DNA of 63,757 nt, from contig NC_068987.1 of the NCBI RefSeq assembly GCF_001194135.2, positions 48,830,932 through 48,894,688 on the forward strand, read 5' to 3'. The notes under the pieces were generated by a model. That model was not told the DNA's origin. It saw nothing but the letters and a program-made list of their open reading frames with translations, and did not search any database. Positions 1 to 62,563 of this stretch are shown here, in pieces (positions within the stretch are counted from its first letter, which is position 1; the number at the start of each line of letters is the position of its first letter). Position numbers and translations under genes: made by a program. The DNA is from Octopus bimaculoides (Eukaryota).

Positions 1-1885
1 TTTCTACAGATCGAGCAGGGCCATCTACCTGAAGGGGTTTGTGGTTTGTCTACCTTCATACTTATTAGGACTTTGGTTTTAGCTAGGTTGACTCTAAGGC
101 TCTTCGATTCTAATCCTTGCTTCCACACCTGAAACTTCTCTAGTTCTGATAATGACTCAACAATTAGAGCAAGGTCATCAGCATAGAGAAGCTCCCAGAA
201 CATCCTGTCTTGAATTCCTCTGTTATTGCCTGGAGGACTATGATAAATAGGAGGGGGCTGAGGACAGAACCTTGGTGGACCCCTACCTCTACCCGGAATT
301 CTTCACTGTACTCGTTGCCGACCTTCACCTTACTGACAGCGTCCCAGTACATGGCTTGCACACTCCTCACTAACCATTCTTCTATCCCTAGTTTCCTCAT
401 TGACCACCAGATGAGGGATTGGGGGACCTTGTCAAAGGCGTTCTCCATGTCAACGAAAACCAGGTACAGAGGTTTATCTTTGGCTAGGTATTTCTCCTGC
501 AGCTGTCTTACCAGAAATATAGCATCAGTGGTGCTTTTCCCTGGCACGAACCCAAACTACATCTCATCTAAACTGACTCTCTCCCTAATTAGTTGGGCTA
601 TAACCCTCTCCGTGACCTTCATTACCTGATCCAACAACTTGATACCTCTGTAATTATTTGTATCTAAAGTGTCACCTTTACCTTTGTAGCAGTTGACTAT
701 GGTGCTGCTACACCAGTCATTGGGTATGACTCCTTCATGTATCACCTGGTTAACTATACAGGTGACTAGGCTATAGCCGACACTGCCAGATATTTTGAGC
801 ATCTCTGCGGTGATTCCTGATGGGCCAGGGGCCTTCCCTGTCTTCATACTCTTAATTGCTTTATGTACTAAGGTACTGTCAATTCGGATAGCTGGTCCCT
901 TTGTTGGGTCGACATTCGGCAGACTCTCTTTCTCCCATTCATTCTCTTTATTGAGCAACCTTTCATAGTGGCGTCTCCAAACCTCTCTCTTTGCAGCTTC
1001 GTTTCGTGCAACTGAACCATCATCTGTGTAGACACATTTCTCTCCCACAACATCATGATTCTCTCTCACACACTGTCTTGTAACATGAAATACTTCAAAT
1101 CTTTGGTCCTCATGGCGCAGAACATTGGCAAATATTTTCTTATCTGCTTCCCCTCTGGCTAAATAAATCTGTCTCCTAGCTTCCCTTCTGGCAGTCTGAT
1201 ACAATACCCTGCTACCACCGTTCTTCCAAACCTGTTTCTTTTCCCTAATGGCCCTGTCAACAACATTGTTCCACCACCATGTTACCTTGGATCGAGAACG
1301 GACTTTGCACCATCCACAGATCTGGTCAGTGGCTCTCAGCAGTTTGTCTCGTAGAAACTTCCACTTGTCTTCCACATCATGTGATGCTAAATCCCCTTCT
1401 ATTTCGTCAAAAGCTTCAAGTAATATGTCTCTAAATCTCTGTCCATTTGCAGGATTGTTAAGCTTCCAGACCCTTCTCCTCCATGGTGGTTGTCTTCTGG
1501 GCATCCATTTAGCCCTGATCCCGAAGTTGCTAACTACTAGTCTATGTTGAGGATACATTCTTCGCCTGGGAAGGTTTTGGCATTTATAAGCAGCCCTCTT
1601 TCCCTTTTTCTGGCAAGGATGTAGTCAATTTGACTAGTGAGTCTACCAGATCGGTAGGTGACTAAGTGACTGGCAGGTTTCCTGAAGTTGGTATTGCAAA
1701 CCATAAGATCATTATCACAGAACTTCAGCAGTCTAGTTCCCTCCTCATTGTGGGAACCAAAACCATAGCCTCCATGTACACCATGGAAGCCCCCTGCATG
1801 TTGTCTGACATGTCCATTGAAGTCACCAGCCACAAAGAGAAGGTCCCTGTCATTCGTCAATGAGGTAGTCTGCAAGAGGGTGTCA
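1..1885 (-). mobile_element. RTE-clade LINE, 5'-truncated and frameshifted, running off the left edge (APE endonuclease + RT)
   Basis: GDFNGHV and SQIDYIL endonuclease motifs (ORF 1537-2004), RT segments (557-1558, 164-547), GVHQGSVLSPLLF, YADD at 174-185. Confidence 0.93.
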
Positions 1886-1941
1886 TGAACAGTATATATA
1901 TATATATATATATATACATATATATAGGTTTGTGTGTGCGC

Positions 1942-1972
<31 letters not shown>

Positions 1973-2296
1973 CTAGCACAGATACCTGGCGTTGCCCTTG
2001 TCACATGATTCGAATTTCATCAAAATTGGAGATGAAGAATTTTAATGAGGGTTCTTTCCCTCTTTACACATCTTTACAAAAATTCTAATGACACATTTAT
2101 CCCATACTACTCATTTTTATGCCCAGATTCCAAAATCCAAATCTTATGGAACCTATTGAAAGGTTTTTTGCTCCTGAAAAATGGAGCTCATGGGGCTCTA
2201 AAATGCAGGAATTAAGGCCTCTATTGTGTGTGTGTGTGTGTGTGTGTGGGGTCTTAAAGTCAACCAGAGAAGTTAAATTGTTGAGAATCTTTTTAA

Positions 2297-2995
2297 CTTA
2301 TATATATTGTTCAAATTTCTTTGAAATCAGAAATATATGTATATTCACTGGGTTTGTAAAAGAGAGAAAAGTTACAGGAAATCAAAAGCGGAATGATCAC
2401 AATAAGCAGTCAGCTACGCTACCCTAGTCGTTACCACTCCCCAATGTAGGATTCTTCACCATACAGGTGACGGGCACAGCTGTAAGATGCATTACGGATC
2501 TATAGCAATTGGAAGGGCATGACCCAACTCAAATAAACATTATTTGGATGCAGACCTCCTTTGAGTCTTTTTATTATCAATGGGTTAGACATAGTCCCTA
2601 GATGGTAACATTGATTTCAAGGCCTTCCAAGATAAGTGATTTATAGATTGCAAATTTATTCTGTCCAGTTACCTATCGGCATAGTGATCATTGGCAAACT
2701 TCAGAGGTGACACTTTCATTTCCCCTTAGCCCTCACGTCACACTGTTGTTAATGTTTATTTGAGTTGGGTCACACCCTTCCAATTGCTATAGATCCATAA
2801 TGCATCTTATTGTTGTGCCCGTCACCTGTATGGTGAGGAATCCTACATTGGGGAGTGGTAACAACTAGGGTAGGGTAGCTGACTGCTTATTGTGATCATT
2901 TCATTTTTGGTTTCCTGTAGCTTTGCTCTCTTTTACAAACCCAGTGAATATACATATATTTGCAATTTCAAAGAAATTTGAACAATAGATATAAG
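2297..2995. mobile_element. Foldback/MITE-like element: 246-bp inverted arms (2297-2542, 2750-2995) around a 207-bp spacer
   Basis: Arms are reverse complements with about 19 mismatches and no indels by manual count. Confidence 0.88.
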
Positions 2996-4522: not shown

Positions 4523-5108
4523 ATTCTTTTATTCTTTTACTTGTTTCAGTCATTTTGACTAGAGCACCACCTTTTAGTCGAAGAAATTAACCCCTGGACT
4601 TATTCTTTGCAATCACTTGTCCAATCACTTCAGTCAAACAACAATTAACCTGGAGTTATGAGTCCAAGAAGCACTATATATTCTATTATATGTAATGTGA
4701 ATTCACCTTCACCTTTCTCTAATGAATCAAACTACATCTCTTCATGCACTGTGCTTGTCTCTTCTCCACTGCACACTTTCAGGCCAATACCACTCATCTT
4801 TCTCTCCTGTTCTCCTACTGCTAATTGTATCACTGTTATTCTGTCACTCCCCTATATATCCATGTTTCACCACTTATTCTATCGGTCTTCTTTGCTGAAC
4901 TGCTAAGTCATGTGGATGTAAACACAGACACAAACACACAAATATATATATATATGGCAGGCTTCTTTCAGTTTCCGCCTACCAAATCCACTCACAAGGC
5001 TTTGGTTGGCCTGAGACTATAGAAGACACTTACCCAAGGTGCCACACAGTAGAACTGAACCCAGAACCATGTGGTTGGGAAGCAAGCTTCTTACCACACA
5101 GCCACGCC
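4523..5108 (-). mobile_element. tRNA-derived SINE (family 'S1'), interrupted by an insert at about 4612-4871
   Basis: Head GGCTGTGTGGTAAGAAGCTTGCTTCCCAACC, tail GACTGAAACAAGTAAAAGAATA. Matches copies at 49966-50380 and 58140-58675. Confidence 0.8.
4650..4875 (+). repeat. Unclassified dispersed repeat, copy 1 (copy 2 at 8958-9200)
   Basis: Collinear about 225-bp match GAGTCCAAGAA...CCATGTTTCACCACT. Confidence 0.85.
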
Positions 5109-8100
5109 TTCATGTTCCTTTGTTATTTAATTAAGGTCAAATTAGCTTAAAATATTCAATCCTGAAATATAAACTTTCAACATATTCTTTCATGATCAGT
5201 TGCTATGTTTCAAACATTTCTGTCAGCACTGTTGTGTTGTTGAAGACTGTGACTTAAAATTTGCATTTATTACATTTCTGGCAATAATACGCAATACAAA
5301 TTTTCTTCCTAAGCTGCATCCTTTTAGCTGGAGTTAGTTTTGTGATGTTAATTTTTTTCTTGAAGAAAAACAAAAAAGAATTTTTGTTCTCTCAGAGTAT
5401 GAAGATGATATTACAAATGGGATGGTAAATGAACCAACTGTAATATTCTAAAAAATAAATAAATGTACAATATTTTCCAGTTTCATGATATGATTCTAAA
5501 TACAAAGAGACGTCAAATTAAAATAATTAAATATGTTTGCTGAATAAAGAATGAAACAGTGTTTGGGAAATCTGCTAGTATTTACTTTTCAGCCCATTCT
5601 GTTGAAATGCAGTGCGTTTCTTTCACCACATTTGAAAACTAATGAATTTAGTAAAATAACTTAATCATTATTAAGCTGGTGTTTGGAACATAAATTAAAA
5701 AGATATTTTGAAGGAAGCACCTGGTTCAAAGGTATGAACAGGAAGTTTGTAACCTAGAACCAGGAGTGATCTCAGGCAGGTTGGTATCAAAAGAGTTAAA
5801 GAACTTTAAAATTGGGTTCAATTTATAAAATGCATGTGAGGAATGATGTACAACAATCGCTCTCACAAGAAATAGTTATTCTTCCACAATTCCAAAACAA
5901 TATAACACTTGAAATGAATATGAACTCATGACCTAGTAATCCAATAACCATGACACGCCGGGTGAAATGCTTAGCAGTATTTTGTCTGTCTTTATGTTCT
6001 GAGTTCAAATTCCACCGAGGTTGACTTTGCCTTTCATCCTTTTGGGGTCGATAAATTAAGTACCAGTTGCGTACTGACGTCAGTCTAATCGACTGGCCCC
6101 TTTCCAACAACATTTTGGGCCTTGTGACTAGAGTAGAAAAGAATAACCATGACAGGGTGATCATCATTGAAAAGCCATATTCCATGCTGGCATGGTTTTA
6201 ACAGCTGTATGCTCTTTCTAATGCCAACCACTTGACAGTGTATTGGAAGCTTTTTTTGTAGCACCAGGAATTGTGAGATTGCCAAGTAACTTGTAAACAA
6301 GACCCCTTGACTGCATGGGGATATAGTAGTGAGAGCAGCAGCTTTGTCCCAGGTGTTGAGAGGCTAGAGAGGTAAGATAGAGGGACTTGCTGTAGAGATA
6401 GCTACCTGACCCCCAAAGAGGTGGAGGGAACAGCTGTCCAATACACAAACATATCTGTTAGTATGAAAAAATATAAATAACCTAAAATAGTCAGGTTGAA
6501 ATTTAGATGAAATTAGAAGAAATCAATTAAAAAAATCAATAACATGAAGACAAAATATGTTTTATTTTTGTTTATTGGGGAAAAACCCAGAATAATGGCC
6601 AGAAGGCACCATTTTAAATGCTGAGTCATTGTAATATAAAAGAAAATAAGGTAACATAATAGTACGATAAAATAATAAGCTGTTGAGAGAAGTAAAAAAA
6701 AAGGAAACAGTACACTCGGAGTATCTACATTCATGGAAGGAGAGAGGAGTCAGTTGTATTTATACTTTCTACTGAATAATGGTCTTAAATATAGCCCATG
6801 GATGTTGTTGACTGATCAGGCACAAGGGTTCTTTAGAATTGTAAAGACTTTTACTGCATATAAAACTATATTGCACACCTGGTTTTCCAGGAGTCTACCA
6901 TATGTAACGTGGTTCTCTTCATCATGACTTAACGTTATTAAACTAATAACGCTGTTGGTGATAGAAATAAAAGTTTTATTGATGTATTTATATTTATTTT
7001 AAATTTCATTCAAATAGATTAAAAAAAAACAAATGAAAACTTAAAGGTTGTTAAACAAACCAAACAGACAAGACAAAAATTTAACAGTTGAAAGGACAAA
7101 ATAGGACTGGTTGTTAAAAGATCTAAATAAATGATAAGCCTTTTATAAGTGCACTAATTTATATCTGAGGTTTTTAATAACTGATTGTAGCCTCATACAA
7201 AGTTTCAGTCAGCAGTGACTTAAGGCACAGCTAATTAAATAGCACCACCTGGTAGAACGATGAACAAAAAATTATAGATTTCTGAGAGGTTATCCATCCA
7301 TGTACTAGAAACCAGGTTAATTGTTGTTTGACTGAAGTGATTGGACAAATATCAGTGTATTCAATATCAATAACGGTTGTAAATTTAATCAAAAGAAAAA
7401 AAAAATGCTATTTGTGGATATCTTTTTTCATTCATGAAATTTGAATTAACCATTCAAATTCTTCAGGTATATAACTACAATGTTAGCAGGATATATTATT
7501 TCATAGCAAACAGGTCCTAAGTTTAGAGGCAGAGTTAAACTGAAATATATTCAAATCAGCATTTATATAAATATATATATAAAATATAGAGGTTATCAGT
7601 AAAATTGATATTTAAAAAGTATTTTATATAATATTTTGATAAAATGTTGCTAAAGAAATAATTTTATAGGCAGTTATGGGAATAGTTTTATCGATAGTGT
7701 TTTGATAATCATTTCCATAAAGAAAAGAATTTAGCTCTTGGCTATAAGAAAATAGCTTTACAAAACTTGCAGTAATATCTAACACATGTAAAAGAAAAAT
7801 GTACAAAAAAATCATAAAACACAAAATAAGATTATTAGAAAGAAATAATTAAATATTTCCTTAAATGGAGGCTATTTGTATTAAAGTAAAATTAAACTGA
7901 AGTTAAACAAATCCCTTGAATCTTCAAAGCAATTTACTCAATGAATTTTAAAAACAAAGTAACACAATGACCTTCAGCAAGAGTAAGTTTCTTTCTTTTT
8001 CTCTCTCCATTCTCTAAAAATATAAATTGTCACATAACTTACTAAACCAGCTAAAGTAGAGGCAATAAGTTTTTTCCATTTTTGTTTAAAAAATGTTTCC

Positions 8101-8225
8101 ACCATAAAAATTTTACAGCAGATACTATTTTATTCCTACAGAATAAAGCAAAGATAAAAATTTAAATAACAATAACAGAAATTAATAATTCATAATAATA
8201 ATAATAATTTGGTTTTGCATTTGAT

Positions 8226-8639
8226 NNNNNNNNNNNNNNNNNNNNNNNNNNNNNNNNNNNNNNNNNNNNNNNNNNNNNNNNNNNNNNNNNNNNNNNNNNN
8301 NNNNNNNNNNNNNNNNNNNNNNNNNNNNNNNNNNNNNNNNNNNNNNNNNNNNNNNNNNNNNNNNNNNNNNNNNNNNNNNNNNNNNNNNNNNNNNNNNNNN
8401 NNNNNNNNNNNNNNNNNNNNNNNNNNNNNNNNNNNNNNNNNNNNNNNNNNNNNNNNNNNNNNNNNNNNNNNNNNNNNNNNNNNNNNNNNNNNNNNNNNNN
8501 NNNNNNNNNNNNNNNNNNNNNNNNNNNNNNNNNNNNNNNNNNNNNNNNNNNNNNNNNNNNNNNNNNNNNNNNNNNNNNNNNNNNNNNNNNNNNNNNNNNN
8601 NNNNNNNNNNNNNNNNNNNNNNNNNNNNNNNNNNNNNNN
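8226..8639. other. Assembly gap (others: 13892-13971, 23334-23502, 38077-38086, 40073-40157, 59044-59053, 62276-62563)
   Basis: Runs of N. Confidence 1.
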
Positions 8640-8784: not shown

Positions 8785-10484
8785 CTGGAAAAAAAAGAAC
8801 AAAAACAAAATTAGTTATAAAGGAAGCAAAATGTTCAACAATTCTGAATTCTACAATAAAGCAGGAAAAAAAAAGACTGTTGAAAATTAATTTTACTTTT
8901 AATATATGTAAAACATCTTTAAGAAAAAAATAATTAAATTAGATTAAATTCAAGTGTCTGGCGTTATGAGTCCAAGAAACACTATATATTCTAATATATG
9001 TAACATTAATTCACCTTCACCTTTCTCCAATGAATCAAACTACACCTCTTCATGCACTATGCTTGTCTCTTCTCCACTGCACCCCTGCAGCCCAATACCA
9101 CTATCATCTTTCTCTCCTGTTCTCCTACTGCCAATTGTATCACTGTTATTCTGTCACTCCCCTATATATATATATATATATATATCCATGTTTCACCACT
9201 CACTGCATTCCCCTTTCCTTGCTATCTCTCCCTTTGCACTCTCACAAACTTCCTGCTCACACACACTGTCCAATCTTCTACCACTCCATTTACATTTATC
9301 TCAATACCAATAATAATAATCCTTTCTACCATAGGTACAAAGTCTGAAATTTTAGGGAAGGAGTTAAATTGATTACATTGATTCCAGTACTCAATTGGTA
9401 CTTAATTTATTGAAAAGCCAAGTCAACCTTGGCAGAATTTTAATTCAGAACAAAGTGAGAGATGAAATGCCACTAAGCATACTGCCCAGCATGCTAACAA
9501 TTCTGCCAGCTTACTGCCTTAATAATAATGGTTTCATTTATTTGCTGCAAGGGCAAAGCACAAGGGGGACAATACAAAAACTGACATAAAGTCAGGGGTT
9601 TACATATAATGAAATGATAAAAAAGAAAAAAAGAAATTCAATATACACAGTATACACTGAAAAAGAAGGGAAATATGCATAGCATACAAAGGTTAAAACA
9701 AAAAAAAGTGGTGGGGAGAATGATAGAGATGTGGCCCTCCTGATACAGGAAGGCCTCTAGGGATAATCGAGGAACTCCACTGTCCGAGATTTCCCTGAAA
9801 CCCCAAGAACAAGTGCCCTCTCCAACTACACTTAGAGAGGTACCATTCACTCTTGCCATTTTTTCAACTTTCACCTATCTTTCAATAAACTCACTCAAGG
9901 ACAGCACTCTCAATTTCCTTTCAAGTGAAACTTGATGAAGTCAATGAGAGTGCTACCAAAGAGGAATGTATCTGTCTCATGCCTTTCAGCCTTGTCCACC
10001 GAACCTCTTTCGCTACAGCCACCAGGCAAAGGAAAACTGCCTTGCCTGCCTGATTGAAGTGCGATTATTACTACAGACTTGGCTAACAGACGGATCTGCC
10101 CCCCACACATGACAGCAGCTATTTGACAACCCCACAAGTCAGCAATGTCTGGACACTGAACAAAGGTGTGCAGAACGGTTTCGTCACTCTGCATGCACCT
10201 TGGACAGGCCTGTCTGACAACACATCCATGCCAGTAGAGTTTATCTCAAACTGGTAGCAGCCCCTATTAGCACTGCCAAGCCAAAAACATGTGGAAATTA
10301 CTCATGATAGTTCCTGACTGGAAAGTCCTCTGGAACAGACTAGTCAGTTTGTTCTTGTTGGCACTCAGAGTCTCCCCAAGAACGTTGTTGCACTTCTCTG
10401 CAACTAATCCTCTATAAATTTCTAAAGCAGAACATCCACCGATCTCATTGCCCAACTGGTAGAGGGCTGTGAGTGCCTGATGAC

Positions 10485-10530
<46 letters not shown>

Positions 10531-11607
10531 TAACAACAACAACAACAATAATACGTACTGTACAGGCAAAGCAGTCAGAATGGTAGCTATGATCCATTGC
10601 CTCAACCCATCTATCTCCAGGATCAATAGGATATTTACACCCAAAGCAAATGGCTTGGAACATTTCCTTCCAGTCTGGAAAATAAAATTGGAAAAGTTTA
10701 TGAGTGTTATGACAAATGAAAGAAAGAATAGAGAATATTGAGAAAAGGCAAAAGAAAAGATAGGAGCAAGGTAAAGAGGGTGAAGAGAAAATTGAGAGTT
10801 AATCTCATACATCCACACACACATATATACACATAGAGTAGAGGCACTCCGTCGCTTATGATGTCGAGGGTTCCAGTTGATCTGATCAACGGAACAGCCT
10901 GCTCGTGAAATTAATGTGCAAGTGGCTGAGCACGCTACAGACACGTGTACCCTTAACGTAGTTCTCGGGGATATTCAGCGTGACACAATGTGACAAGGCT
11001 GACCCTTTGAATTACAGGCACAACAGAAACAGGAAGTAAGAGTGAGAGAAAGTTGTGGTGAAAGCGTACAGCAGGTTTCGCCACCATCCCCTGCCGGAGC
11101 CTCGTGGAGCTTTTAGGTGTTATTGCTCAATAAACACTCACAACACCCGGTCTGGGAATCGAAACCGCGATCCTATGACCGCGAGTCCGCTGCCCTAACT
11201 ACTGGGCCATTGCGCCTCCACTTATACACATACACACACACATAAACAAGTGTCAGTGTCTGTTGATGACAATATAACAATGTATATTATACCTGAGGTG
11301 TGAATAGTGACATGCAACCACATACTTATCTGGATCACAATAAAAAAGGAGAGGAGAAAGTGATACCCCTACAGTGTCAGTGCCAGTGTGTGATGGTAAT
11401 GATGTAAAAATGTTTAGTATGTCTTAGGTGCAGAAAAAGAAATGACAAGCAGTTGCATACTCACGAGGATCACAATAGAACTCCCCATCTTCTATGTGGA
11501 AGCTGCTGCCTCCAATTGGCTTCCTACAGTGAGCACACAAGAAACAATTGGGATGGAAAGTAGTGTTCATAGCATTCACACATTCCTATAAGAAAAAGAA
11601 AATATCA

Positions 11608-11639
<32 letters not shown>

Positions 11640-12147
11640 CATACATGAATTAAAGATTAGAGAGATACAAAAGAAAAACTGACTAATATCTCTTATCTTT
11701 TACCTGTTCCAGTCATTAGATTGTGGTCATGCTGGGGCACTACCTTGAACTTTTAGTCGAATGAAATCAACACCAGAACTTTTTTTTCTCTTTTAAAGCC
11801 TGGTACTTATTCTATTGATCAATTTTGCTGAACTGCTAAGTTACAGTGACATAAACTCACCAACACGAGTTGTCAAGTGATGGAAGTGGGGGGAACAAAC
11901 ACAGATACATACATACATATATATATATATAAGAATTTAAGGATTGGAGAAAACGCATGTTATAATTGCATACTTTATTCCTACATATGTTTCAAAGGAT
12001 TACAACCTGTGTGATCCATAGGGATCTTTGATATTAAAATTGTAACCTTCTCATCAGGGAAAGCATGGGAATCATCTTAAATGTAAGACATTATGACCAA
12101 TTATCTATCAGAAGAATTTTTATTCATTAAGATAGAAGAAATACACA

Positions 12148-12196
<49 letters not shown>

Positions 12197-13858
12197 GGCT
12201 TCTTTCAGTTTCCATCCACTCACAAGGCTTTGTTCAGCCTGAGCCTATAGTAGAAGACACTTGCGCAAGGTGCCATGCAGTGGGACTGAACCCAGAGCCA
12301 TATGGTGGACAAGCAAGCTTCTTACTACACAGCCACACCTGCAATTATAATTTTTGGGGACTACATTACCCTTTTCCATTCAGATAGCTGAAGAGGTGGA
12401 AAAGGCAGACCTAAGGATCAGCTCTGAAATAACCAAGGTGAGGCAGGCTAGTAAGCAAGGAGAGATGCAAATTACTGTGAATCAAGAATCCACTGAAGAC
12501 GTCACCAACTTCATCCATCTAGGCAGTATTATTACTACAGATGGAGATATTGAGGCTGATGTCATCTCCAGAACTGGGTGTGCAGCAGCAGTGTTCAAAG
12601 GAATTAGCAAGATCTAAACCAGCACTCCAATTAGCAACCATGTGAAGATCCTATTGCATCAGATCACTGTCTTGCCAACAGCAATCTATGCAGGAGGAAA
12701 TAACTGCCAAGATCACTCAGAGGGTGAATCACCAATGATATGCAGAATACTCAAGATGATTTACAGGGACAGAATCATAAACTCTGAAGTTTTAAGAAAA
12801 GCCAACCTGTGCATCCTGCAGGAGATTATAGTAGAAAGAAGAGTAAGACTTGCAGCTCATGTTTTCCAACTGCTAGAAGAATGACTGTCCAAAATTGCTA
12901 AACTTCTAAATTTTGAAATGTGTTTAAAATCTTTTCAGATTTAGGATTCATAAACTGTGGTTAAGAGCATCTTTTCTTTGTATAGCTTTTTGACAATTTC
13001 AGTCCCGCAAGAAATTTTTAAAGTACTTACCCCAATGATTACTTGGTTACATTTATGGCAGTGAGGAGCAAAGTAGAGCTCGTAGTCCTTCTCACAATAA
13101 AGGAAGCCACCTTCTTCAACAAAGCCAATGTCAAAGAGCTTAACACCACAGCTAGGGTTAGCACAAACGAAGTGAGCAGGACACCAACTTTTTCCCATGG
13201 CCAATACAAACGGTCCTCTGAAATAAAATACAAAGACAGATAAGAAAATTTCTTTGTTATGTGGAAATGTATCTCCACAATTCCTTCATAAAAGGAAAGT
13301 GATTTTCTGTAAGCTCTTGGCACCAATGACGTTTTCAACGTATTGTAGTGATTCAAATAAAGTACTGGTTATCCATTTGCTTTCTCATAGTCTAAGAATG
13401 TATACTACTGAAACTTTGTCTCCAAAAGGTACCAATCCTGTATGGCTTACCACAACGAGCCATATCTCTCTACAGTACTTATTTGCAGTTAGATGTTTGC
13501 CAGGTATTAGATTAAAGTGCCAGTGACAAACACACACTGATGATTTAGTAAGTCTTAAATCATGAAATCCAACAAAGTTAAATTAAGTTACGTATGACCT
13601 AGTGGTTGGGCTGTTGCACTTATGATCTGGCAACTCTAGTTTCAATTCCTAGGCAGGTAGTGTATTATATTCTTGAGCAAAACACTTCATTTCATGTTGC
13701 TCCAGGTCCACTTAGCTGTAAATGGATAACCCAGGGATGGATTGGTGTTCTGTTTAGTGGAAATGTTGGCATGCTCACCTGGCCAGCTGAGTGACATCAT
13801 TTGAAAGCTACAACAATGCAAGGAAGTGCATCATGACCAGCGGTGTATAACACACACA

Positions 13859-13891
<33 letters not shown>

Positions 13892-14488
13892 NNNNNNNNN
13901 NNNNNNNNNNNNNNNNNNNNNNNNNNNNNNNNNNNNNNNNNNNNNNNNNNNNNNNNNNNNNNNNNNNNNNNTATGTTATTATAATGATAAGTGAAGTGTA
14001 ATGACAATGATGATGATAAAAGTGGCTGTGATTCACACAAAAGAAATAAACAAACCTAATTGGAGTTCCACAAGCGGCACAGACAGGGATCCTACCACTC
14101 TGATCAGGGGTTTTATAGACAGCATCGCCTTTCTTGCCTTTCGTAGCACCATGTCCAGTTGGTTTAGGGGGTCCAGCAGATACCTTAGGCTTGGTCGAAG
14201 CAGGAGGCCTATGGACTGGTGGTGGTGGTGGTGCTTTTGGTACAATCACAGGAGCTGGTGGAGGTGGTGGTGCTCTTGGAGCATGAGCAGCTTGCTTCGG
14301 AAGAGCTAAGCAAAAGAAAATTTTGTGGGTTCATATTGAGGAAGGCTGACAGAAGGATATTAAAAACACAAGACATGAGATAAAATAGAGAAATCATTAA
14401 AGAAATATTTCTGCTTATCATTTTAGATTATATATACATTATGTATACACACAACATGCATACATATGCATGACACAATCACATAATT

Positions 14489-14519
<31 letters not shown>

Positions 14520-15335
14520 CATATATAGACAATATCACATACACACAATATGGTACTCCGTCGGTTACAACAATGAAGGTTCCACTTGCTCTGATCAATG
14601 GAACAGCCTGCATGTGAAATTAACATGCAAGTGGCTGAGCACTCCACAGACACGAGTACCTTTAATGTAGTTCTCAGGGAGATTCAGCATGATACAGAAT
14701 ATGACAAGACTGGCTCTTTGAAATATCAGTACAACACATTTTTGCCAGCTGAGTGGACACAGTAACACAGACAATCAAACATACACACAGATAATTACAT
14801 ACACAACCAGGCACATAATTACACACCAAATCCACTCACAAGTCTTTAGTTGACATGGGGTACAGTAGAAGACACTTGCACAAAGTGACCAGCAGTGGGA
14901 CTGAACCCAAGAGTTCATGGTTGGAAAGCAAGCTTCTTAACCATACAGCCATGCTCACACCAGTAACAATAATTACAAAAATGAATAAATAGAATAAAAA
15001 AAAATCACAACTTACAGTACATTTGAACTGGTGGTGGAGGAGGTGGTGGTGGTGCAGGAGCTGCAGGAGGTGGTGGCGTGTAGCTTGCCACTGGAGCCCT
15101 GTTGGTGACAAGACAGACAGATCAGATATGGTTATTGTTTGTAAATAGTTAGGCCATTCTCCAAGGTGTACTTTGACAAACCCCATCTAATGTTAAATTC
15201 ACTAATTAGATATCTATTGTTATTATTCGATATTTTAATTCTTGTAAATTATTATTGCTGTAGTAACGAAACAACTACAAATTCATCTATTCCTGACTAT
15301 TTGCAAAACATTTTGTACAAGTTGACGTAGTTAGA

Positions 15336-21661: not shown

Positions 21662-24600
21662 TAAATATGGATTTTAAAATATTGAACTGATGTGGAAATC
21701 AACTTTCATTACTATTTATTATCCTCCTTTATAATAAATTTTATACCTTGGAAGTGGCAGAATAGAAATATCTGAAACAAAAAGATATTTGAGCTGTTTG
21801 ATAGTGTATAACATAAATTCATAATTACATATTTATAAACATGATGTCACACTGAACAGAAATATTACAAAACTAACTGGATTATTTGAAATATTGCATT
21901 TTCTTTTTTAAATTTATTTTGGGTGTCTTTGTTGAGAAATGAAGATGAAGAATATATCTGATTAGCTATTGATATTCATCCTTTCTACAATTCACAATGA
22001 AAGAAGAATACTTTTTGAGGAAAATTTTTTCTCTCTGAATATAGATTATTATTTAGAAAAAATAAGAAATGTTGATGGCGGGAGGTCAAAATTGCTCTAC
22101 AGAACATGTGAAAATGAATGTTTGAAAATGAACTGTTTGATATGTCATACAAAACAATGGATTTGGTTATAGATTTCTTTACTCCTACTGGGCATTTGCA
22201 TAGTTGCCCCCTTTATTTTTGCTTTATTTTCTTAACCCTTTAGCATAATGCTTGTTTATACTTATTGTTTTGAATTAATCATGCAATATCTTGATGATGT
22301 GACTATTTTTGGACTGATATTGTAGGTTGGTGAGAGAAACCAGATCTGGTTAATTTAAGCATAAAACAGAAAAAACATTTTGGCTGCATATGGTCAGTTT
22401 AAAGGCCAAAGGGTTAAGGAATCCATAGATCATGACTAAAGACCTCACCTGCTTCTAGAGAGTTGGAACTCAATCAGGCTTGCAGGGCCCAACACTTTAC
22501 AAGTGATTAACTAAAAAAGAACATTATAGATGAGAAGAATAAGAGAAGCAAAATAACTTCAGTTGTGGTGTAGAAGTGGCTTGTTGGGAACTTACTGTCC
22601 ATTCTACAGCACATACTTTGTAAAGCTGAAGAGTTATGGAAAATATTTTCAGGGTATTTACTATCAATGTCACCTATTTTTCATATTTAATAATTTCTGT
22701 ACAATGTGACCTTCATGTTTATCAAACAATAGATTACATACATTTCAGTTATTACACCAACTATGAGCTCATACGTACATACATACATACATATCAACAA
22801 CTGTGAGTTTATGCATTTAATATACATACATAATACAAAGCATTCTGTACTAGCTTGTACATACATGATAGAAAATACCCTACATATCCTACATAATTTT
22901 AGCATAGGCATTCTGGAAAGAGAAAGAGAACAAGGACAGTAGAAAAAAAAAGAAAAAGGTTCTGAATGTTGAATATAATGATTTGTGTTGTTTTCATTAC
23001 CCATTATTTGAACTGATTAGTAAATGTGTTTGATCCTTGAAAGTGTTGGCAGCATTTTCTTTGGAATACAGCCCTATAGGTGAGTTGTACTGCCAGTTTC
23101 CTACAGCTTTTACTGTATTCCCTTTGTTTGCTTGTTGAGAGGGTAAAGGAGAAACACTTCGAGATCTGTTGGGTGACTGCATCGGATTCAAGGGTCTCAG
23201 GGTTGGAGGGGGTTCTGAAATAGTTGATCAGGTAAATAGTTTGTCATTTTATTAACATTTTTTTTTTATTATGAGTTGTAATTAAGAATGAGAGAGAGAG
23301 AGAGGGGTCATGAGTGAGTGAGTGAGAGAGAGANNNNNNNNNNNNNNNNNNNNNNNNNNNNNNNNNNNNNNNNNNNNNNNNNNNNNNNNNNNNNNNNNNN
23401 NNNNNNNNNNNNNNNNNNNNNNNNNNNNNNNNNNNNNNNNNNNNNNNNNNNNNNNNNNNNNNNNNNNNNNNNNNNNNNNNNNNNNNNNNNNNNNNNNNNN
23501 NNTATATATATATATATATATATATTTAGAGAGAGAGAGAGAGAGAGCTTAAGAAAAAGTTTAAGAGTCAGAAAGAATGTGAGAACGATAGAGAACACTG
23601 AGAGAAATCAATGTAAAAGTGAAAGCAAAAAAGAAGATAAAGATGACAAAAATGAGAAAGTGAGAAAGGAATGAATGTGAAGGAAGAACAAAGACACAAT
23701 GAGCTAATTTTTGAGAAAATGAATATAATGTATACCCACTTCTCTTTTTGCTTCTTTATTACCAGAGTTTTATCAAACATTGTTAGAATTATTGATAGTG
23801 TTTATATAATTAGATATAATAATGTTGACTGAATTAACTCCTAATGTATTACTGCTGTTTAGTTTTAAATAATAGAAGAATTAAAAAAAAATAATAATGG
23901 TAAAAGACAAAACTAAATGCAAAAAGTTGTTTGTCATATCATTGCTACATACTAGACTGTAAGAATATTATCTCTATAGTCTGGGTCAAATTATGCACAT
24001 TAAAGTTATCTTGGGCAAGTGTCTTCTACAATAGCCCTAAGCCAACCAAAGCCTTGTGAGTGAATTTGGTAGTTGGAAACTGAAAGAAGCCTGTTTATAT
24101 ATATGTACCTGCATCTGCATAGGTGTGTTTGTGTCTCTCTCTGTGCCTTGACATTGTGTAATAGTTGTACATGAGAATCACTGTCATATAAGCAGCATCA
24201 TTCATTTCCAATCTCTTGTGAAAACATGTTTAGCCACGTGGATATATTACCTTACTTGGAAACAGTTGAGGGGTGGTGACAAAAATGGCATCCAGCCAAA
24301 GGAAATCAGCCTAAATGAATTCCATGTGACCCATGCAAGTATAGGAAAGTGGATGTTAAATGATGACTTCTTACATAGGGATAAACAATGCCAAAATTTT
24401 GAAAGTAGGAACAGCCAGGTGTTTATTTTATTAATCTACTTTGGAAGAATGAAAAGTGATTTCAAAATAAGAATGATTTGAGCTGGAGAAACTATAGGGT
24501 CATAATTGTTGTAGCATCAAACATTGTATCTGGTGCTCTCATCAGACCAATAATTAGATTTATTGCAGTTTATTTTGACTGAAGCACAGATGGCTTTGTG

Positions 24601-27600: not shown

Positions 27601-30600
27601 GATTCAATCCTCTTAAATGTAAATAGGTACCATACAGAGGTATAAGCTCAAAGCTAAGTAACACAGTTACTGTGTGATTAAGATTAGCACAATTGTGCAG
27701 TATTAAACTTGAATCTTCTGCAAGCTAAAGAAAAGAATGGATATCCACCATAAATAATTCCAAACCTGTTAAAATGGCACTGAAGTGATTTCTCTGAGAT
27801 ATAAGAACAACAAATCATATTGATTTAATGTCTAAATGAAGAATGGATACTGAAACTTTAATGAATATCAATATCTTAATCCAGTGTCTAGACATTGCAT
27901 GCTTCCCTGAAGACCTTCAACTAATGTAGGACTGAGACGGATGGCATGCTCAGGTCAAAAATGCCTGAGCAAACTCAACCAGAAGATGATGAAAATGTTA
28001 ATTCTAGTATATACCCATCCCTATAGTACCATTGTAGAAGTCTTCAGTGAAGTGCAGATTGGATAACCAAACAGGTGCAATATCTCTGAATTTCATTTTG
28101 GACATTAATATATCTATCTTAACCAAGCTTCAAACTGCCTGCTTTGACTGGAATAAAGCAGACTGGAACTCTTATCGTACCGAGCTGCGACGCCCAAACT
28201 GGTTTGAATTTTATGTCTATGGAGATGTGAACACTATAATTCAGAACATTCTGAATTCAATATGGATGGTATGTGCAGCATCGGTACCACGCAAGCACAA
28301 AAAACCACTCAATAGTGCAATTTGGGAGACTGCTGCAGTCCGACTTGCCAGGAAAGAACGTCATAATGCTGAACAGGAATACAAAATGCACAAATCAGAA
28401 TCAGAGATTAACAGGAAAAAATGCAATAGATCATCCAACCATCTCAAGCAGGTGAAAAAAAGGCAGTACTTGAATTCAAACAGTGCATAGCAACCAACCC
28501 TGACAGCAAAGTGTTCTGGAGGTATGTACATTCAAAGCAGAGAACTCACACTCCAGTTGGTCCCCTTCGCAATCCCCACACAGTCCAGATTACTGACAAT
28601 CCCAAAGAATGTGCAGAAATTATTGCTGGATGCTATGCAGGTATCTTTACTGTCGAAAAGCAAAATGTTCCATCTCCATCACCTCTGACATCGGACTCTA
28701 TAACTACTATGAAATTTACACCAACAATGCTACAATGCCACCTTAAGAAATGTAACTATGCCTCTTCTGGTCTCGATGATGTTACATAGCTACTTCTCAA
28801 ACGTGGTTGGTGCTTTCTTCTGATCCAACTTTCACTATTCGTTCAATTCTGTCTTGACAATGGTGATACTCCAGAGCAGTGGAAAACTGCCAGTGTTATC
28901 CCTCTGTTCAAAAAAAGGTGACTGCACATCGCCTGTCAACTATCGCCCCGTCAGTCTTACTAGCTGCATCGCCAAACTGATAGAATATTGTGTCAGAGAA
29001 ACCCTCTGGAACTTCTGGAAGTTTCACAGCCTCATCCAGCCATCACAATTTGGATTTATTCCTAACTTCAGCTGCTGTAATCAATTCACTGAGTTTTTTG
29101 AGGACATTACCTGAATCACTGATGGCGGCTCCTGGGTGGATGTTGTTTACCTTGACTTTGCTAAGGCTTTTAATTCTGTGCCACACAAAAGACTTATCGT
29201 GAAACTCTCTGCAATGGGTGTAAGAGATGATCTCTATAACTGGTTGAAGTCCTTTATTATTGGCCAAAAAGAGGTTGTCACAGTTCTAGGACAGCACTCT
29301 TCACCCTATGAGATGACATCTGGTGTACCACAGGGATCTGTTCTTGGCCCCCTTCTATTTGTTGCATATATTAATGATATAGATGCCAACTTAAAGAATA
29401 TGCCACAGTGCTGAAATATGCAGATGACATCAAGCTGTACCTCGAAATAAAAAGGACAGATCCTGTACACTATAGATCTTTATTGCAATCAGACCTGGAC
29501 ACGATCCAGCAATGGATCATGGACTGGCAACTCAAGATGGCTGTGGACAAATGTACCACCATGCATTTTAGGAGGAAAAACCCAGTGTCTATTTACTCCC
29601 TCCACAACACTAATCTCAAAAAGTCTTCTTGTGAACGTGACCTGGGCATTATTGTTGACAGCAATTTATGTTGGACAAAACACATTGCTAAAATTGCCAA
29701 GAAGGCTGAGGGTGTCTTGGCATCACTTACCAAGTCCTTTGTGAGCTGCTCTCAGGCTATCTATCTGAGGCTTTATATAGCTATGGTGTGGCCTCACCTG
29801 GAATTTGCATCTCTGGTCTGAAACCGTTCAGCGGTATGCAACCAAGAGAATACCATCCATCAGGCATTTGCTATATTCTGAAAGCCTTACTTCCCTGGGC
29901 ATGGATACATCGAAACTCCTACGTCTGGCAGACACCAATAAAATTATTACCCATCTTACTAACAATAACTCTGAGCACCTTTTCAAATTCCACCTGTCTA
30001 ACACCCATGGACATGTTTACAAAGTCAGAAAACAGCACAGCTCCTATGACTTTTGTAAACACTTTTTCATGCTAAGAGTTGCTGAAGTATGGAACAAACT
30101 GCCAGCATCAGTTGTTAGTTGTTGGAGCACTGCATCCTTCAAAACTTCCATGATTCCTGAGATTCGCCAACACTATACCTGATTTTCTCCCCTCCATACA
30201 CACACAAGCATGTATCTGACTCGTACACTGTTCACTTTCCAGACATTTGTACATTACAGCATAGGCTTTATACGCACTTTTGACAAGTTGTAGTGCACCT
30301 GAGCACTGTATACAGTAATTTCATTATTATTATTATTTATATCCTATTTCTTCTTTTGTTAGGCTTTCAGAAAAATATAACTTATTTGAAATTCAGAAAT
30401 GTACTTGTCTGGCAAGTGATTTGATCTGAGATTGTGTGTTGAAACTAAAGCAATTACACAATGAAAACCATATTAATCATTCAAAAACACAAAAACTGTT
30501 CACTTCACTCATTATTGGATGTCAAAATTTTTATTGCACGATCTGCTATCTAATCATAGTTAGCAGTGTGAGGAAAATTTTGATATGAAATAATGATCAA

Positions 30601-37782: not shown

Positions 37783-37863
37783 CTAGATGAGGTAAAAGAA
37801 GAAAAAATAGAAATTAAATACTGATTACTGTATAAATCTTTTCATCAGAAGAGATTTAAATAA

Positions 37864-38260
37864 TGAATATAAACAAATTGACATATTCACTTGGTACAAG
37901 AATATTGTGAACTTGTATTACTGGTAACAAATTGGAACAGCTATCAATAATATTTAACCAACAACCATTACCTTACTAATCCCACTTGAATGAATATATA
38001 CAAATTGATACATTCACTTGGTACAAGAATATTGTGAACTTGTATTATTGGTAACAAATTGGAACAGCTATCAATANNNNNNNNNNATAATATTTAACCA
38101 ACAACCATTACCTTACTAATCCCACTTGAATGAATATATACAAATTGATACATTCACTTGGTACAAGAATATTGTGAACTTGTATTATTGGTAACAAATT
38201 GGAACAGCTATCAATAATATTTAACCAACAACCATTACCTTTAATACCAATCCCACTTGA
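37864..38260. repeat. 127-bp tandem repeat, about 3 copies, with a 10-N gap inside
   Basis: Units start at 37864, 37991 and 38131. Copy 1 differs from copies 2 and 3 at a few bases. Confidence 0.85.
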
Positions 38261-49965: not shown

Positions 49966-50177
49966 ATTCTTTTACTTGTTTCAGTCATTTGACTGTGGCC
50001 ATGCTGGAGCACCGCCTTTAGTTGAGCAAATCGACCCCAGGACATATTCTTTGGAAGCCTAGTACTTATTCTATCGGACTCTTTTGCCGAACCGCTAAGT
50101 TACAGGGACGTAAACACACCAGCATCGGTTGTCAAGCGATGTTGGAGGGACAAACACAGACACACAAACATATACAC

Positions 50178-50216
<39 letters not shown>

Positions 50217-50380
50217 CGACGGGCTTCTTTCAGTTTCTGTCTTCCAAATCCACTCACAAGGCCTTGGTCGGCCCGAGGCTATAGTAGACGACACTTGCCC
50301 AAGGTGCTACGCAGTGGAACTGAACCCGGAACCATGTGGTTGGTAAGCAAGCTACTTACCACACAGCCACTCCTACGCCT
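49966..50380 (-). mobile_element. Full-length young S1 SINE inserted into an M2 MITE (49890-50538)
   Basis: CpG-rich intact copy. MITE halves on either side are collinear with 41010-41235. Confidence 0.85.
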
Positions 50381-58139: not shown

Positions 58140-58675
<536 letters not shown>

Positions 58676-61600: not shown

Positions 61601-62563
61601 CACCCAACAGGCTAGGTGGGAAGGCCAATATTCCCCCTTGACTGGGACAACAGTCCGTCACAAGTTTTCCATTTACAGATGAGAGGACAGGAGTAACATG
61701 AATTGAAGTGTTTTGCTTAAGAACACGACATACCACTGGTCTGGAAATCAAAATCACGATCTAACATTTATGAGTGCAACACCCCTAACCACTAGATGAC
61801 ATGCCTTCACATAATGTAATATGATTCTAATGTAATATAACTCTTGTGCCATGTAAGTGCTGTGGGTGTGCTGCAAGTATTTTTGTGTGGCACAAGGCCA
61901 GCAAAGAGGGGGTAAGTTGATTATATCAACTCCAGTACTCAACTAGTACTTATTTTATCAACTTCTGAAAGGATGAAAGGCAAAGTCACTTAATTTTCTC
62001 ATCCTGAAGAGAGTGGACAGGCCTGTAGCTACTTTGGCAGGATGAATGTCAAGGTTGGTCTCGACAAGGTTTGAATTTGGGACATAGCTGTAATTAAATA
62101 CCACAAGCATTTATTATTTTTTTCATCCAATGTCCCAAATGATTCTGCAAAAGCTTTGTTGTTCTTAAATGATTTATACAAAAATATCAAAAATTGACTT
62201 AAGTGTTTGAACTTTAAATAAAATGACTAATTATTATCATCATTGCTCTCATTGTAAAAAGCTGACTTAAAGCTTNNNNNNNNNNNNNNNNNNNNNNNNN
62301 NNNNNNNNNNNNNNNNNNNNNNNNNNNNNNNNNNNNNNNNNNNNNNNNNNNNNNNNNNNNNNNNNNNNNNNNNNNNNNNNNNNNNNNNNNNNNNNNNNNN
62401 NNNNNNNNNNNNNNNNNNNNNNNNNNNNNNNNNNNNNNNNNNNNNNNNNNNNNNNNNNNNNNNNNNNNNNNNNNNNNNNNNNNNNNNNNNNNNNNNNNNN
62501 NNNNNNNNNNNNNNNNNNNNNNNNNNNNNNNNNNNNNNNNNNNNNNNNNNNNNNNNNNNNNNN

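What the first reader, a model, noticed from the sequence alone, without database searches (positions are those of the whole stretch)
11978..12061. Intact-core hammerhead ribozyme in sense orientation inside the Zasp LIM-region intron
Seen (minus strand): stem I UUCC (12061-12058) pairs with GGAA (11981-11978). Core C3-A9 is CUGAUGA (12057-12051). Stem II GAAGGUUACAA/UUGUAA-U-CCUUU has 11 bp and one bulge, with an extra GAUCC-CUAU-GGAUC hairpin in its loop. GAAA is at 11993-11990, stem III is the palindrome ACAUAUGU, and the triplet GUA predicts cleavage between 11982 and 11981. The only deviation is a G10.1:U11.1 wobble, plausibly CpG decay. Established: type I hammerheads with short palindromic stem III occur in Penelope-like elements and retrozymes and can act as dimers. 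Inference: it is transcribed with the gene between exons G and H, so self-cleavage could cut the pre-mRNA inside the LIM-coding region and affect output of LIM-containing isoforms.
Basis: partly seen in the sequence, partly recalled or inferred. Interest (0 to 1): 0.85.

Follow-up and report, generated by a model that had tools for sequence, protein, structure and literature searches.

The report
Transposon-borne hammerhead ribozyme motif in intron
A complete hammerhead self-cleaving RNA motif really is present in this LIM-gene intron, but it sits on a ~220-base piece of inserted DNA and looks like a decaying mobile-element relic, an ordinary thing in invertebrate genomes, not a device that controls the gene.

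Summary
On the minus strand, 12061-11978 has every invariant hammerhead core base, type-I topology, a GUA cleavage triplet and an 8-nt palindromic helix III. Helix II is longer than reported (5 bp, a bulge, then 9 bp). The motif lies in sense orientation in a 1445-nt intron between two LIM-coding exons.

Chance is unlikely. A loose descriptor expects about 0.05 hits per window. Adding a perfectly palindromic helix III gives about 5-7e-5.

No Rfam hammerhead model reports it, even at E<=10 on 111 nt.

The motif lies on a ~210-222-nt insertion (about 12152-11931). This insertion splits the (TG)n(TA)n microsatellite of a ~450-nt SINE that is uninterrupted in two other copies in the window. Penelope-like elements carry such hammerheads and cut AT-rich/(TA)n targets, and they were recently active in Octopus vulgaris.

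The one deviation, G10.1:U11.1, sits at the core's only obligatory CpG, and window CpG o/e is 0.21.

Best reading (0.6): a solitary, decaying hammerhead relic derived from a Penelope-like element or a retrozyme. Helix III is unstable as a monomer and there is no tandem partner, so it is probably weak or inactive.

A regulatory role has no support. Genome copy number and conservation across species could not be tested.

The parts
12058..12075 (-). Helix I, 5' strand. Proximal UUCC is 12061-12058. The distal extension is CAUGCU 12067-12062 and AUGAUU 12075-12070.
   Evidence: Sequence; hammerhead-constrained fold
12051..12057 (-). Catalytic core, C3-A9: CUGAUGA
   Evidence: descriptor hit
11994..12050 (-). 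Helix II. It has 5 bp (GAAGG/CCUUU, starting with the G10.1:U11.1 wobble), bulged U11999, then 9 bp. The ~28-nt loop contains the hairpin GAUCC-CUAU-GGAUC (12026-12013).
   Evidence: helix II alone -13.2 kcal/mol
11991..11993 (-). Core G12 A13 A14
11983..11990 (-). Helix III, ACAUAUGU (A15.1 to U16.1). It is an 8-nt perfect palindrome: 2 bp plus an AUAU loop as a monomer, 8 bp as a dimer.
   Evidence: (+2.4 kcal/mol as a hairpin, -7.0 as a self-duplex)
11981..11982 (-). Predicted cleavage site, between A17 (11982) and G1.1 (11981)
   Evidence: Follows from the hammerhead numbering. GUA is a natural cleavage triplet (PMC1636495).
11962..11981 (-). Helix I, 3' strand: GGAA 11981-11978, UAA bulge, AGUAUG 11974-11969, AAUUAU 11967-11962
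11931..12152 (-). Insertion of ~210-222 nt that carries the motif. It is absent from two other full-length copies of the host SINE. The 5' boundary is uncertain (12152-12141) because the flank is microsatellite-like.
   Evidence: blastn within the window; alignment A1
11690..12352 (-). Host SINE-like repeat (~450 nt without the insertion) with a central (TG)n(TA)n microsatellite. The 5' half is 12352-12153 and the 3' half is 11930-11690.
   Evidence: Uninterrupted copies lie at 49968-50374 and 58134-58671.
11586..13030 (-). Intron (1445 nt) that holds the SINE, the insertion and an antisense LINE fragment
   Evidence: Splice sites and reading frames; LIM Pfam hit
13031..13217 (-). Upstream LIM-coding exon
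11465..11585 (-). Downstream LIM-coding exon

Best explanation
This is a genuine hammerhead-type sequence that came in on a mobile element. A ~220-nt retroelement fragment inserted into the (TA)n-rich microsatellite of an older SINE inside the intron. The fragment is most likely a 5'-truncated end of a Penelope-like element (PLE), or a monomer of a PLE-mobilised non-LTR retrozyme.

In the parent element the hammerhead folds as a three-way junction. It cuts after A17, leaving a 2',3'-cyclic phosphate and a 5'-OH. This processes multimeric element transcripts, and neighbouring copies pair through the palindromic helix III to form the active dimer.

The copy here is solitary and is decaying neutrally. 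C11.1 of the core's only obligatory CpG has become U, giving the G10.1:U11.1 wobble. The motif is transcribed passively with the pre-mRNA. With an unstable monomeric helix III, no tandem partner and a competing register-shifted pairing, it probably cleaves slowly or not at all. It should have little or no effect on the gene.

Shown: the motif, the insertion, its orientation and the CpG depletion. Inferred: PLE or retrozyme ancestry, the ancestral C11.1, and low activity.
For: - Every invariant core position is present, with type-I topology.
- The motif is rare by chance: 0.05-0.08 per window for the loose descriptor, 5-7.5e-5 with a palindromic helix III, and 0 of 400,000 planted cores when a long helix II is also required.
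- A small palindromic helix III is the hallmark of metazoan and PLE hammerheads. The authors list it as an argument against randomness (PMC4209133).
- A 2-bp stem with a tetraloop is the form found in invertebrate retrozymes (PMC7229834).
- A longer-than-usual helix II, a short 4-5 bp helix I and a mid-helix-II bulge are all described for PLE hammerheads.
- The motif lies on an insertion that splits the microsatellite of a SINE intact elsewhere in the window.
- PLEs favour (TA)n or AT-rich targets, yield 5'-truncated copies, and carry the hammerhead near the end of the inserted unit (PMC8557442; PMC11167929).
- Octopus vulgaris has 30 recently active Penelope families (PMC13282606).
- Dispersed retrozyme monomers are common, and about 43% of copies in Xenopus are intronic (bioRxiv 10.64898/2026.07.22.740005).
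- CpG o/e is 0.21 and TpG o/e is 1.32. A U11.1C revertant narrows the gap between the hammerhead fold and the MFE from 4.3 to 3.6 kcal/mol.
- GUA is a natural, active triplet, and a long segmented helix II has a natural precedent (PMC1636495).
Against: - No Rfam hammerhead model reports the site, even at E<=10 on 111 nt.
- The G10.1-C11.1 pair, highly conserved in real hammerheads, is not met.
- No loop1-loop2 tertiary-contact motif is recognisable, and the helix II loop is far larger than in canonical metazoan hammerheads.
- There is no second copy of the insertion, no tandem unit and no adjacent PLE RT/GIY-YIG ORF in the window.
- The insertion has no significant terminal direct or inverted repeats and no poly-A tail.
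- The whole insertion is not unusually structured (z -0.59).
- Membership of a repeat family could not be tested. No cephalopod DNA was reachable.
Confidence: 0.6

Rival explanations
1. Chance look-alike. The inserted DNA happens to contain a hairpin flanked by CUGAUGA and GAAA, with a common CATATG-type palindrome. It has never been a ribozyme.
For: - The loose descriptor expects 0.05-0.08 hits per window, which is thousands in a 2-3 Gb genome. With helix II >=5 bp it still expects hundreds.
- No Rfam hammerhead hit.
- G:U at 10.1/11.1 and an atypical helix II.
- The hammerhead fold is not the MFE, and the fold z-score is only -1.75.
- No family evidence.
- Real genomes hold more hairpins and microsatellite-like palindromes than Markov nulls do. 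The finding was also selected by a reader scanning for such motifs.
Against: - With the a-priori hallmark of a perfectly palindromic helix III, the expectation falls to 5-7.5e-5 per window, about 2-3 per genome.
- Adding helix II >=5 bp gives roughly 1e-5.
- With the long helix II it was 0 of 400,000 planted cores.
- The single deviation sits at the one obligatory CpG of the core, in a region with CpG o/e 0.21.
- The motif sits on an insertion in a (TA)n tract, which is the target type of hammerhead-carrying PLEs.
Confidence: 0.22
2. Co-opted intronic ribozyme. Self-cleavage of the pre-mRNA between the two LIM exons tunes the output of LIM-containing isoforms, in the manner suggested for the conserved amniote intronic hammerheads HH9 and HH10.
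For: - Sense orientation inside the LIM-coding region.
- The core is intact apart from one wobble.
- Helix I can extend to about 16 bp with the flanking sequence, and helix II is stable.
- Conserved intronic hammerheads exist in vertebrates (cited in PMC4209133).
Against: - The motif lies on a TE-like insertion inside a SINE.
- It is a single copy with a monomeric helix III of +2.4 kcal/mol, and no partner for the dimer is present anywhere in the window, so none lies in the intron.
- A competing shifted-register pairing sequesters C3-G5.
- No match to the HH9/HH10 or other hammerhead models.
- The nearest retrievable LIM-gene loci have no hammerhead-like motif.
- Retrozyme copies are depleted from introns relative to intergenic DNA, which suggests they are tolerated rather than used.
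- From memory, not checked here: published reporter experiments found that slow ribozyme cuts in introns do not prevent splicing.
Confidence: 0.05
3. Another intronic small RNA, for example a C/D-box snoRNA, with UGAUGA as the C box and a terminal stem UUCC/GGAA.
For: A weak cmscan match to a fungal C/D snoRNA model (Afu_328, 15.7 bits against a gathering score of 70, E=2). The location is intronic, and a UGAUGA box lies next to a terminal stem.
Against: There is no CUGA D box downstream of the C box. The aligned box reads UUGA and lies 10 nt from the terminal stem. The score is far below gathering. The C box starts with C instead of a purine.
Confidence: 0.02

Closest known systems
Hammerheads of Penelope-like elements (PLE-HHRs; Cervera & de la Pena 2014, PMC4209133)
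   Same: Type-I topology, a short proximal helix I (4 bp), a longer-than-usual helix II that can carry a bulge, and a small palindromic helix III that implies action as a dimer. The motif is carried by a retroelement that inserts into AT-rich/(TA)n DNA. Cleavage as a single copy is expected to be low.
   Different: No pLTR-ORF-pLTR context and no RT/GIY-YIG ORF nearby. There is no extra nucleotide between A9 and G10.1. The 10.1/11.1 pair is G:U, not the conserved G-C. The helix II loop is ~28 nt and holds its own hairpin.
Metazoan non-LTR retrozymes (PMC7229834; bioRxiv 10.64898/2026.07.22.740005)
   Same: The size fits: unit consensus lengths of 51-972 bp are reported. The unit is AT-rich and has a type-I hammerhead whose helix III is 2 bp plus a tetraloop, as in invertebrates. 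Dispersed monomer copies, many in introns, are a known state. Axolotl HHR_Amex2 keeps some activity with a U-U mismatch at the base of helix II.
   Different: No tandem repeat and no second unit. The canonical 6-bp helix I / 4-bp helix II with conserved interacting loops is absent. The insert does not fold into an unusually stable structure (z -0.59).
Conserved intronic hammerheads of amniotes (HH9, HH10; de la Pena & Garcia-Robles 2010)
   Same: A single type-I hammerhead in sense orientation in an intron of a protein-coding gene.
   Different: Those are ultraconserved across species and match their own Rfam models. This one has no model match, sits on a TE-like insertion within a SINE, and its conservation could not be tested.
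Schistosome Sm-alpha and newt satellite-2 hammerheads
   Same: Repeat-borne type-I hammerheads in animals. The newt form needs dimerisation through a weak palindromic helix III.
   Different: Those occur in thousands of tandem or dispersed copies with canonical helices I and II. Only one copy is seen here.

Membership tests
Hammerhead ribozyme, type I | Invariant core C3 U4 G5 A6 N7 G8 A9 and G12 A13 A14 | tested here: met
   CUGAUGA 12057-12051 and GAA 11993-11991
Hammerhead ribozyme, type I | A15.1-U16.1 pair and a non-G residue at position 17 | tested here: met
   A11990 pairs with U11983, and A17 is 11982. GUA is a natural triplet.
Hammerhead ribozyme, type I | Three helices around the core, with helix I open-ended | tested here: met
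   Helix I 4 bp (extendable), helix II 5+9 bp, helix III 2 bp or an 8-bp dimer
Hammerhead ribozyme, type I | Conserved G10.1-C11.1 Watson-Crick pair | tested here: not met
   G12050:U11994 is a wobble. It is compatible with CpG to TpG decay (CpG o/e 0.21), but the ancestral state is unknown.
Hammerhead ribozyme, type I | Score at or above gathering for an Rfam hammerhead covariance model | tested here: not met
   No hammerhead family listed at gathering score or at E<=10. The ~45-nt excess in helix II may account for part of the loss.
Hammerhead ribozyme, type I | Loop1-loop2 tertiary contacts needed for activity at physiological Mg2+ | tested here: inconclusive
   No canonical 6-bp/4-bp helices with interacting loops. 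A UAA bulge lies 4 bp into helix I and the helix II loop is large. Contacts cannot be judged from sequence.
Hammerhead ribozyme, type I | Mg2+-dependent site-specific self-cleavage | not testable with these tools
   Needs in vitro transcription and a cleavage assay
PLE hammerhead / non-LTR retrozyme | Small palindromic helix III (15.2-16.2 and loop 3) | tested here: met
   ACAUAUGU is a perfect 8-nt palindrome. Expected by chance 5-7.5e-5 per window together with the rest of the motif.
PLE hammerhead / non-LTR retrozyme | Located in a pLTR next to an RT/GIY-YIG ORF, or in tandem units | tested here: not met
   No PLE ORF near it. The nearby RT-like ORFs are an antisense LINE fragment. No tandem or second copy.
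PLE hammerhead / non-LTR retrozyme | Insertion into AT-rich or (TA)n target DNA | tested here: met
   The segment interrupts the (TG)n(TA)n tract of a SINE that is contiguous in two other copies.
PLE hammerhead / non-LTR retrozyme | Member of a multi-copy family showing covariation in the helices | not testable with these tools
   No cephalopod genome in the reachable collections. Scans found nothing.
Conserved intronic hammerheads (HH9/HH10 type) | Conservation at the orthologous intron position across species | tested here: inconclusive
   Only distant LIM-gene loci (76-82% aa identity) could be fetched. They have no hammerhead-like motif and no nucleotide similarity. Close relatives were unavailable.

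The most novel reading that the evidence does not exclude
The TE-derived hammerhead has been co-opted. It retains enough monomeric activity, helped by the long helix I and the stable helix II, to cut a fraction of the nascent pre-mRNA between two LIM exons. It thereby biases the gene towards short isoforms that lack the C-terminal LIM domains. This would be an invertebrate counterpart of the amniote intronic hammerheads.
Probability: 0.04. Interest if true: 0.75.

Novelty: new member of a known kind. Interest (0 to 1): 0.27.

Why it matters
If the best reading is right, this is one more dispersed copy of a well-known class: retroelement-borne type-I hammerheads in animal genomes. Its value is mainly for annotation.

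It shows that standard Rfam models miss such copies when helix II is long. It also shows that the one obligatory CpG in the hammerhead core is a predictable decay point in methylated gene bodies.

It would matter more only if the motif proved conserved and active. It would then be a rare case of a ribozyme placed inside the coding region of a muscle LIM gene and able to influence isoform choice.

Tried and rejected
1. Rfam cmscan at gathering score and at E<=10 on 701 nt and 111 nt gave no hammerhead hit. The other hits were low-complexity miRNA look-alikes, a CRISPR repeat and a C/D snoRNA model at 15.7 bits.
2. C/D snoRNA reading rejected, because there is no D box.
3. Search for other hammerhead-like sites or other copies of the insertion in the window found none.
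4. Terminal inverted repeats, terminal direct repeats (a possible >1-unit tandem or circular permutation) and poly-A on the insertion were not significant against shuffles or random window 60-mers. An 8-nt AAATTCTT repeat 181 nt apart is not supported as a unit boundary.
5. Rod-like or unusually stable folding of the whole insertion was not found: z -0.59 sense, -0.32 antisense.
6. PLE ORFs near the site: the + strand ORFs at 12354-12884 look like the C-terminal part of a LINE RT. Pfam gave no hit and no GIY-YIG domain.
7. Comparative data were not obtainable. An exact-ORF look-up found nothing. The protein search found no hit above 82% identity. Two metagenome scans and one viral-contig scan returned 0. 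Five distant LIM-gene loci had no hammerhead-like motif and no similarity to the intron.
8. The tandem ~130-nt repeat at 37820-38216, near a CTGATGA...GAAA string, has no hammerhead and spans an assembly gap.
9. A literature search for direct data on a G:U pair at 10.1/11.1 found nothing specific.

Full report
**Observation.**
  - UUCC, 12061-12058.
  - CUGAUGA, 12057-12051.
  - GAAGG, 12050-12046, pairs with CCUUU, 11998-11994.
  - U11999 is bulged, followed by UUACAA/UUGUAA.
  - GAAA, 11993-11990.
  - The palindrome ACAUAUGU, 11990-11983.
  - A17 at 11982 and GGAA at 11981-11978.
- The MFE fold extends the second part of helix II to 9 bp and confirms the inner hairpin GAUCC-CUAU-GGAUC.
- Helix I can continue past a UAA bulge into 6 + 6 further base pairs with the flanks.
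- The only departure from the hammerhead consensus is the G10.1:U11.1 wobble.

**Gene context.**
- The flanking minus-strand exons are 13217-13031 and 11585-11465. They have AG/GT splice sites and encode LIM domains. A further LIM exon lies near 10700.
- The motif is therefore in sense orientation in a 1445-nt intron of a LIM-domain gene.
- I did not verify the labels 'Zasp' or 'octopod'. The best PDB match was paxillin, ahead of PINCH and PDLIM5 LIM domains. No protein above 82% identity was found in the large protein collection.

**Is it more than chance?**
- A structural descriptor was used: core, helix I >=4 bp, helix II >=3 bp, helix III >=2 bp, A15.1-U16.1, H17. It finds this site and no other in the window.
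- In Markov order-1 and order-3 sequence with the window's composition, the descriptor expects 0.05-0.08 hits per window. With helix II >=5 bp it expects 0.003-0.014. That corresponds to hundreds to thousands of chance hits in a 2-3 Gb genome, so the bare motif is not compelling.
- Requiring helix III to be a perfect palindrome lowers the expectation to 5-7.5e-5 per window. This is a recognised hallmark of metazoan and PLE hammerheads, and the authors cite it as an argument against randomness (PMC4209133).
- Helix II of 5 bp + bulge + >=6 bp gives 2.5-5e-5 per window. Both conditions together gave 0 of 400,000 planted cores.
- Real genomes hold more hairpins than Markov sequence, and the features were partly chosen after the fact. 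I therefore treat chance as unlikely but not excluded.
- No Rfam hammerhead model reports the site at gathering score, nor at E<=10 on 701 nt or on 111 nt. The ~45-nt excess in helix II probably accounts for part of this, but I could not test a trimmed version.

- The two repeats flanking the motif are halves of one element.
  - 11696-11929 matches 49968-50182 and 58671-58442.
  - 12153-12352 matches 50188-50374 and 58352-58134.
  - In those two copies the halves are contiguous, joined only by a (TG)n(TA)n microsatellite.
- The intron therefore holds a ~450-nt SINE on the minus strand. Its central microsatellite is interrupted by a ~210-222-nt complex segment, about 12152-11931. The hammerhead motif sits in that segment, with its cleavage site about 50 nt from the segment's 3' end.
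- The segment has no other copy in the window.
- It has no significant terminal inverted or direct repeats and no poly-A.
- It has no unusual overall folding stability.
- The neighbouring RT-like ORFs at 12354-12884 are on the opposite strand and look like a LINE C-terminal fragment, not a Penelope-like element.

**Why a Penelope-like or retrozyme origin is the best fit.**
- Canonical PLEs carry type-I hammerheads in their pseudo-LTRs (PMC4209133; PMC8557442).
- The PLE variants described there have several traits seen here: a short helix I of 4-5 bp, a longer helix II that sometimes carries a bulge, and a small palindromic helix III.
- PLEs insert preferentially into (TA)n or AT-rich DNA.
- Reverse transcription starts internally, a short distance downstream of the hammerhead, and 5' truncation is usual (PMC11167929).
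- Animal non-LTR retrozymes are considered non-autonomous PLE derivatives. Their units are 51-972 bp. Dispersed monomers are common, and about 43% of Xenopus copies lie in introns (bioRxiv 10.64898/2026.07.22.740005).
- Invertebrate retrozyme hammerheads typically have a 2-bp helix III capped by a tetraloop (PMC7229834).
- Octopus vulgaris has 30 recently active Penelope families (PMC13282606). This is relevant if the window is indeed from an octopod.
- All of this is consistent with the locus. None of it proves membership, because no family copies could be retrieved.

**The wobble.**
- C11.1-G12 is the only obligatory CpG in the hammerhead core.
- The window has CpG o/e 0.21, with TpG 1.32 and CpA 1.26. 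Decay from C11.1 to U11.1 is therefore exactly what a neutral, methylated copy would show.
- A U11.1C revertant stabilises helix II from -13.2 to -14.8 kcal/mol. It narrows the gap between the hammerhead-compatible fold and the MFE from 4.3 to 3.6 kcal/mol.
- Axolotl HHR_Amex2 has a U-U mismatch at the base of helix II and still self-cleaves weakly, so the wobble need not abolish activity.
- GUA is a natural and active triplet (PMC1636495).

**Likely activity and effect on the gene (inference).**
- As a monomer, helix III costs +2.4 kcal/mol. As a self-duplex it gives -7.0 kcal/mol, which fits a design that works as a dimer.
- In PLEs and retrozymes the partner is the neighbouring tandem copy. 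Here there is none anywhere in the window, and hence none in the intron. Dimerisation would need two separate pre-mRNAs.
- The MFE and centroid folds pair C(2.1)-C3-U4-G5 with U16.1-A17-G1.1-G1.2 in a shifted register. This sequesters part of the core. Traps of this kind between the cleavage triplet and CUGAU are described for viroid hammerheads.
- PLE mini-hammerheads cleave poorly in vitro even as dimers.
- I therefore expect slow or negligible cleavage and little effect on LIM isoforms.
- The five LIM-gene loci retrieved through the three best-matching proteins looked up (from other, distant organisms) have no hammerhead-like motif, even with a relaxed descriptor. This is only weak negative evidence.

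**Verdict.**
The site is a real hammerhead-type motif that most probably came from a PLE or retrozyme. It looks like a solitary relic on a TE insertion nested in a SINE, not a demonstrated regulator.
- It is a new member of a known kind.
- The decisive missing data are genome-wide copy number and family consensus, presence or absence in sister species, and a cleavage assay.

Noticed in passing
window 11690-12352, 49968-50374, 58134-58671; partial copies near 4525-5112, 14781-14974, 24010-24107, 54499-54650, 55331-55463, 56828-56979, 61182-61437: An abundant ~450-nt SINE-like family with a tRNA-like head (GGTTCAGTCCCACTGC box), a variable central (TG)n(TA)n microsatellite and a conserved 3' half. 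There are about 10 copies or fragments in 64 kb, in both orientations.
   Followed up: partly
window 12354-12884 (+): Two adjacent ORFs (87 and 80 aa) resemble the C-terminal part of a LINE reverse transcriptase. They lie antisense to the gene in the same intron and abut the SINE. Pfam gave no significant hit.
   Followed up: partly
window 164-2004 (-): A LINE with RT-like ORFs (a weak match to a group II intron RT model over the RT core) and an upstream ORF that looks like an endonuclease. It is interrupted by a microsatellite.
   Followed up: partly
window 28047-30182 (+): A second LINE-like set of ORFs (147, 137 and 125 aa) with RT C-terminal-type sequence.
   Followed up: no
whole window: Strong CpG depletion (o/e 0.21) with an excess of TpG and CpA (1.32, 1.26) and normal GpC (0.99). 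This indicates heavy methylation-driven decay across this gene body.
   Followed up: yes
window 37820-38216: About three tandem units of ~127-140 nt. Two are identical and they flank a run of N (38077-38087), so this is possibly an assembly artefact. TRF did not report the array.
   Followed up: partly
window 2297-2542 and 2750-2995: A 246-nt inverted repeat, 92% complementary, with arms 207 nt apart. It looks like a foldback or MITE-like structure.
   Followed up: no
window 13865-13971 vs 23418-23528; also 8200-8600 and 62300-62560: The 'inverted repeats' of 95-98% here include assembly gaps (runs of N) next to (TA)n. They are artefacts, not real repeats.
   Followed up: partly
window 13797-14249 (-) and about 10448-10798 (-): Further exons of the same gene. 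One is a proline-rich stretch leading into a LIM start (…[12 protein letters not shown]). The other is a downstream LIM exon (…[32 protein letters not shown]) followed by a long ATT/GTT-type microsatellite.
   Followed up: no
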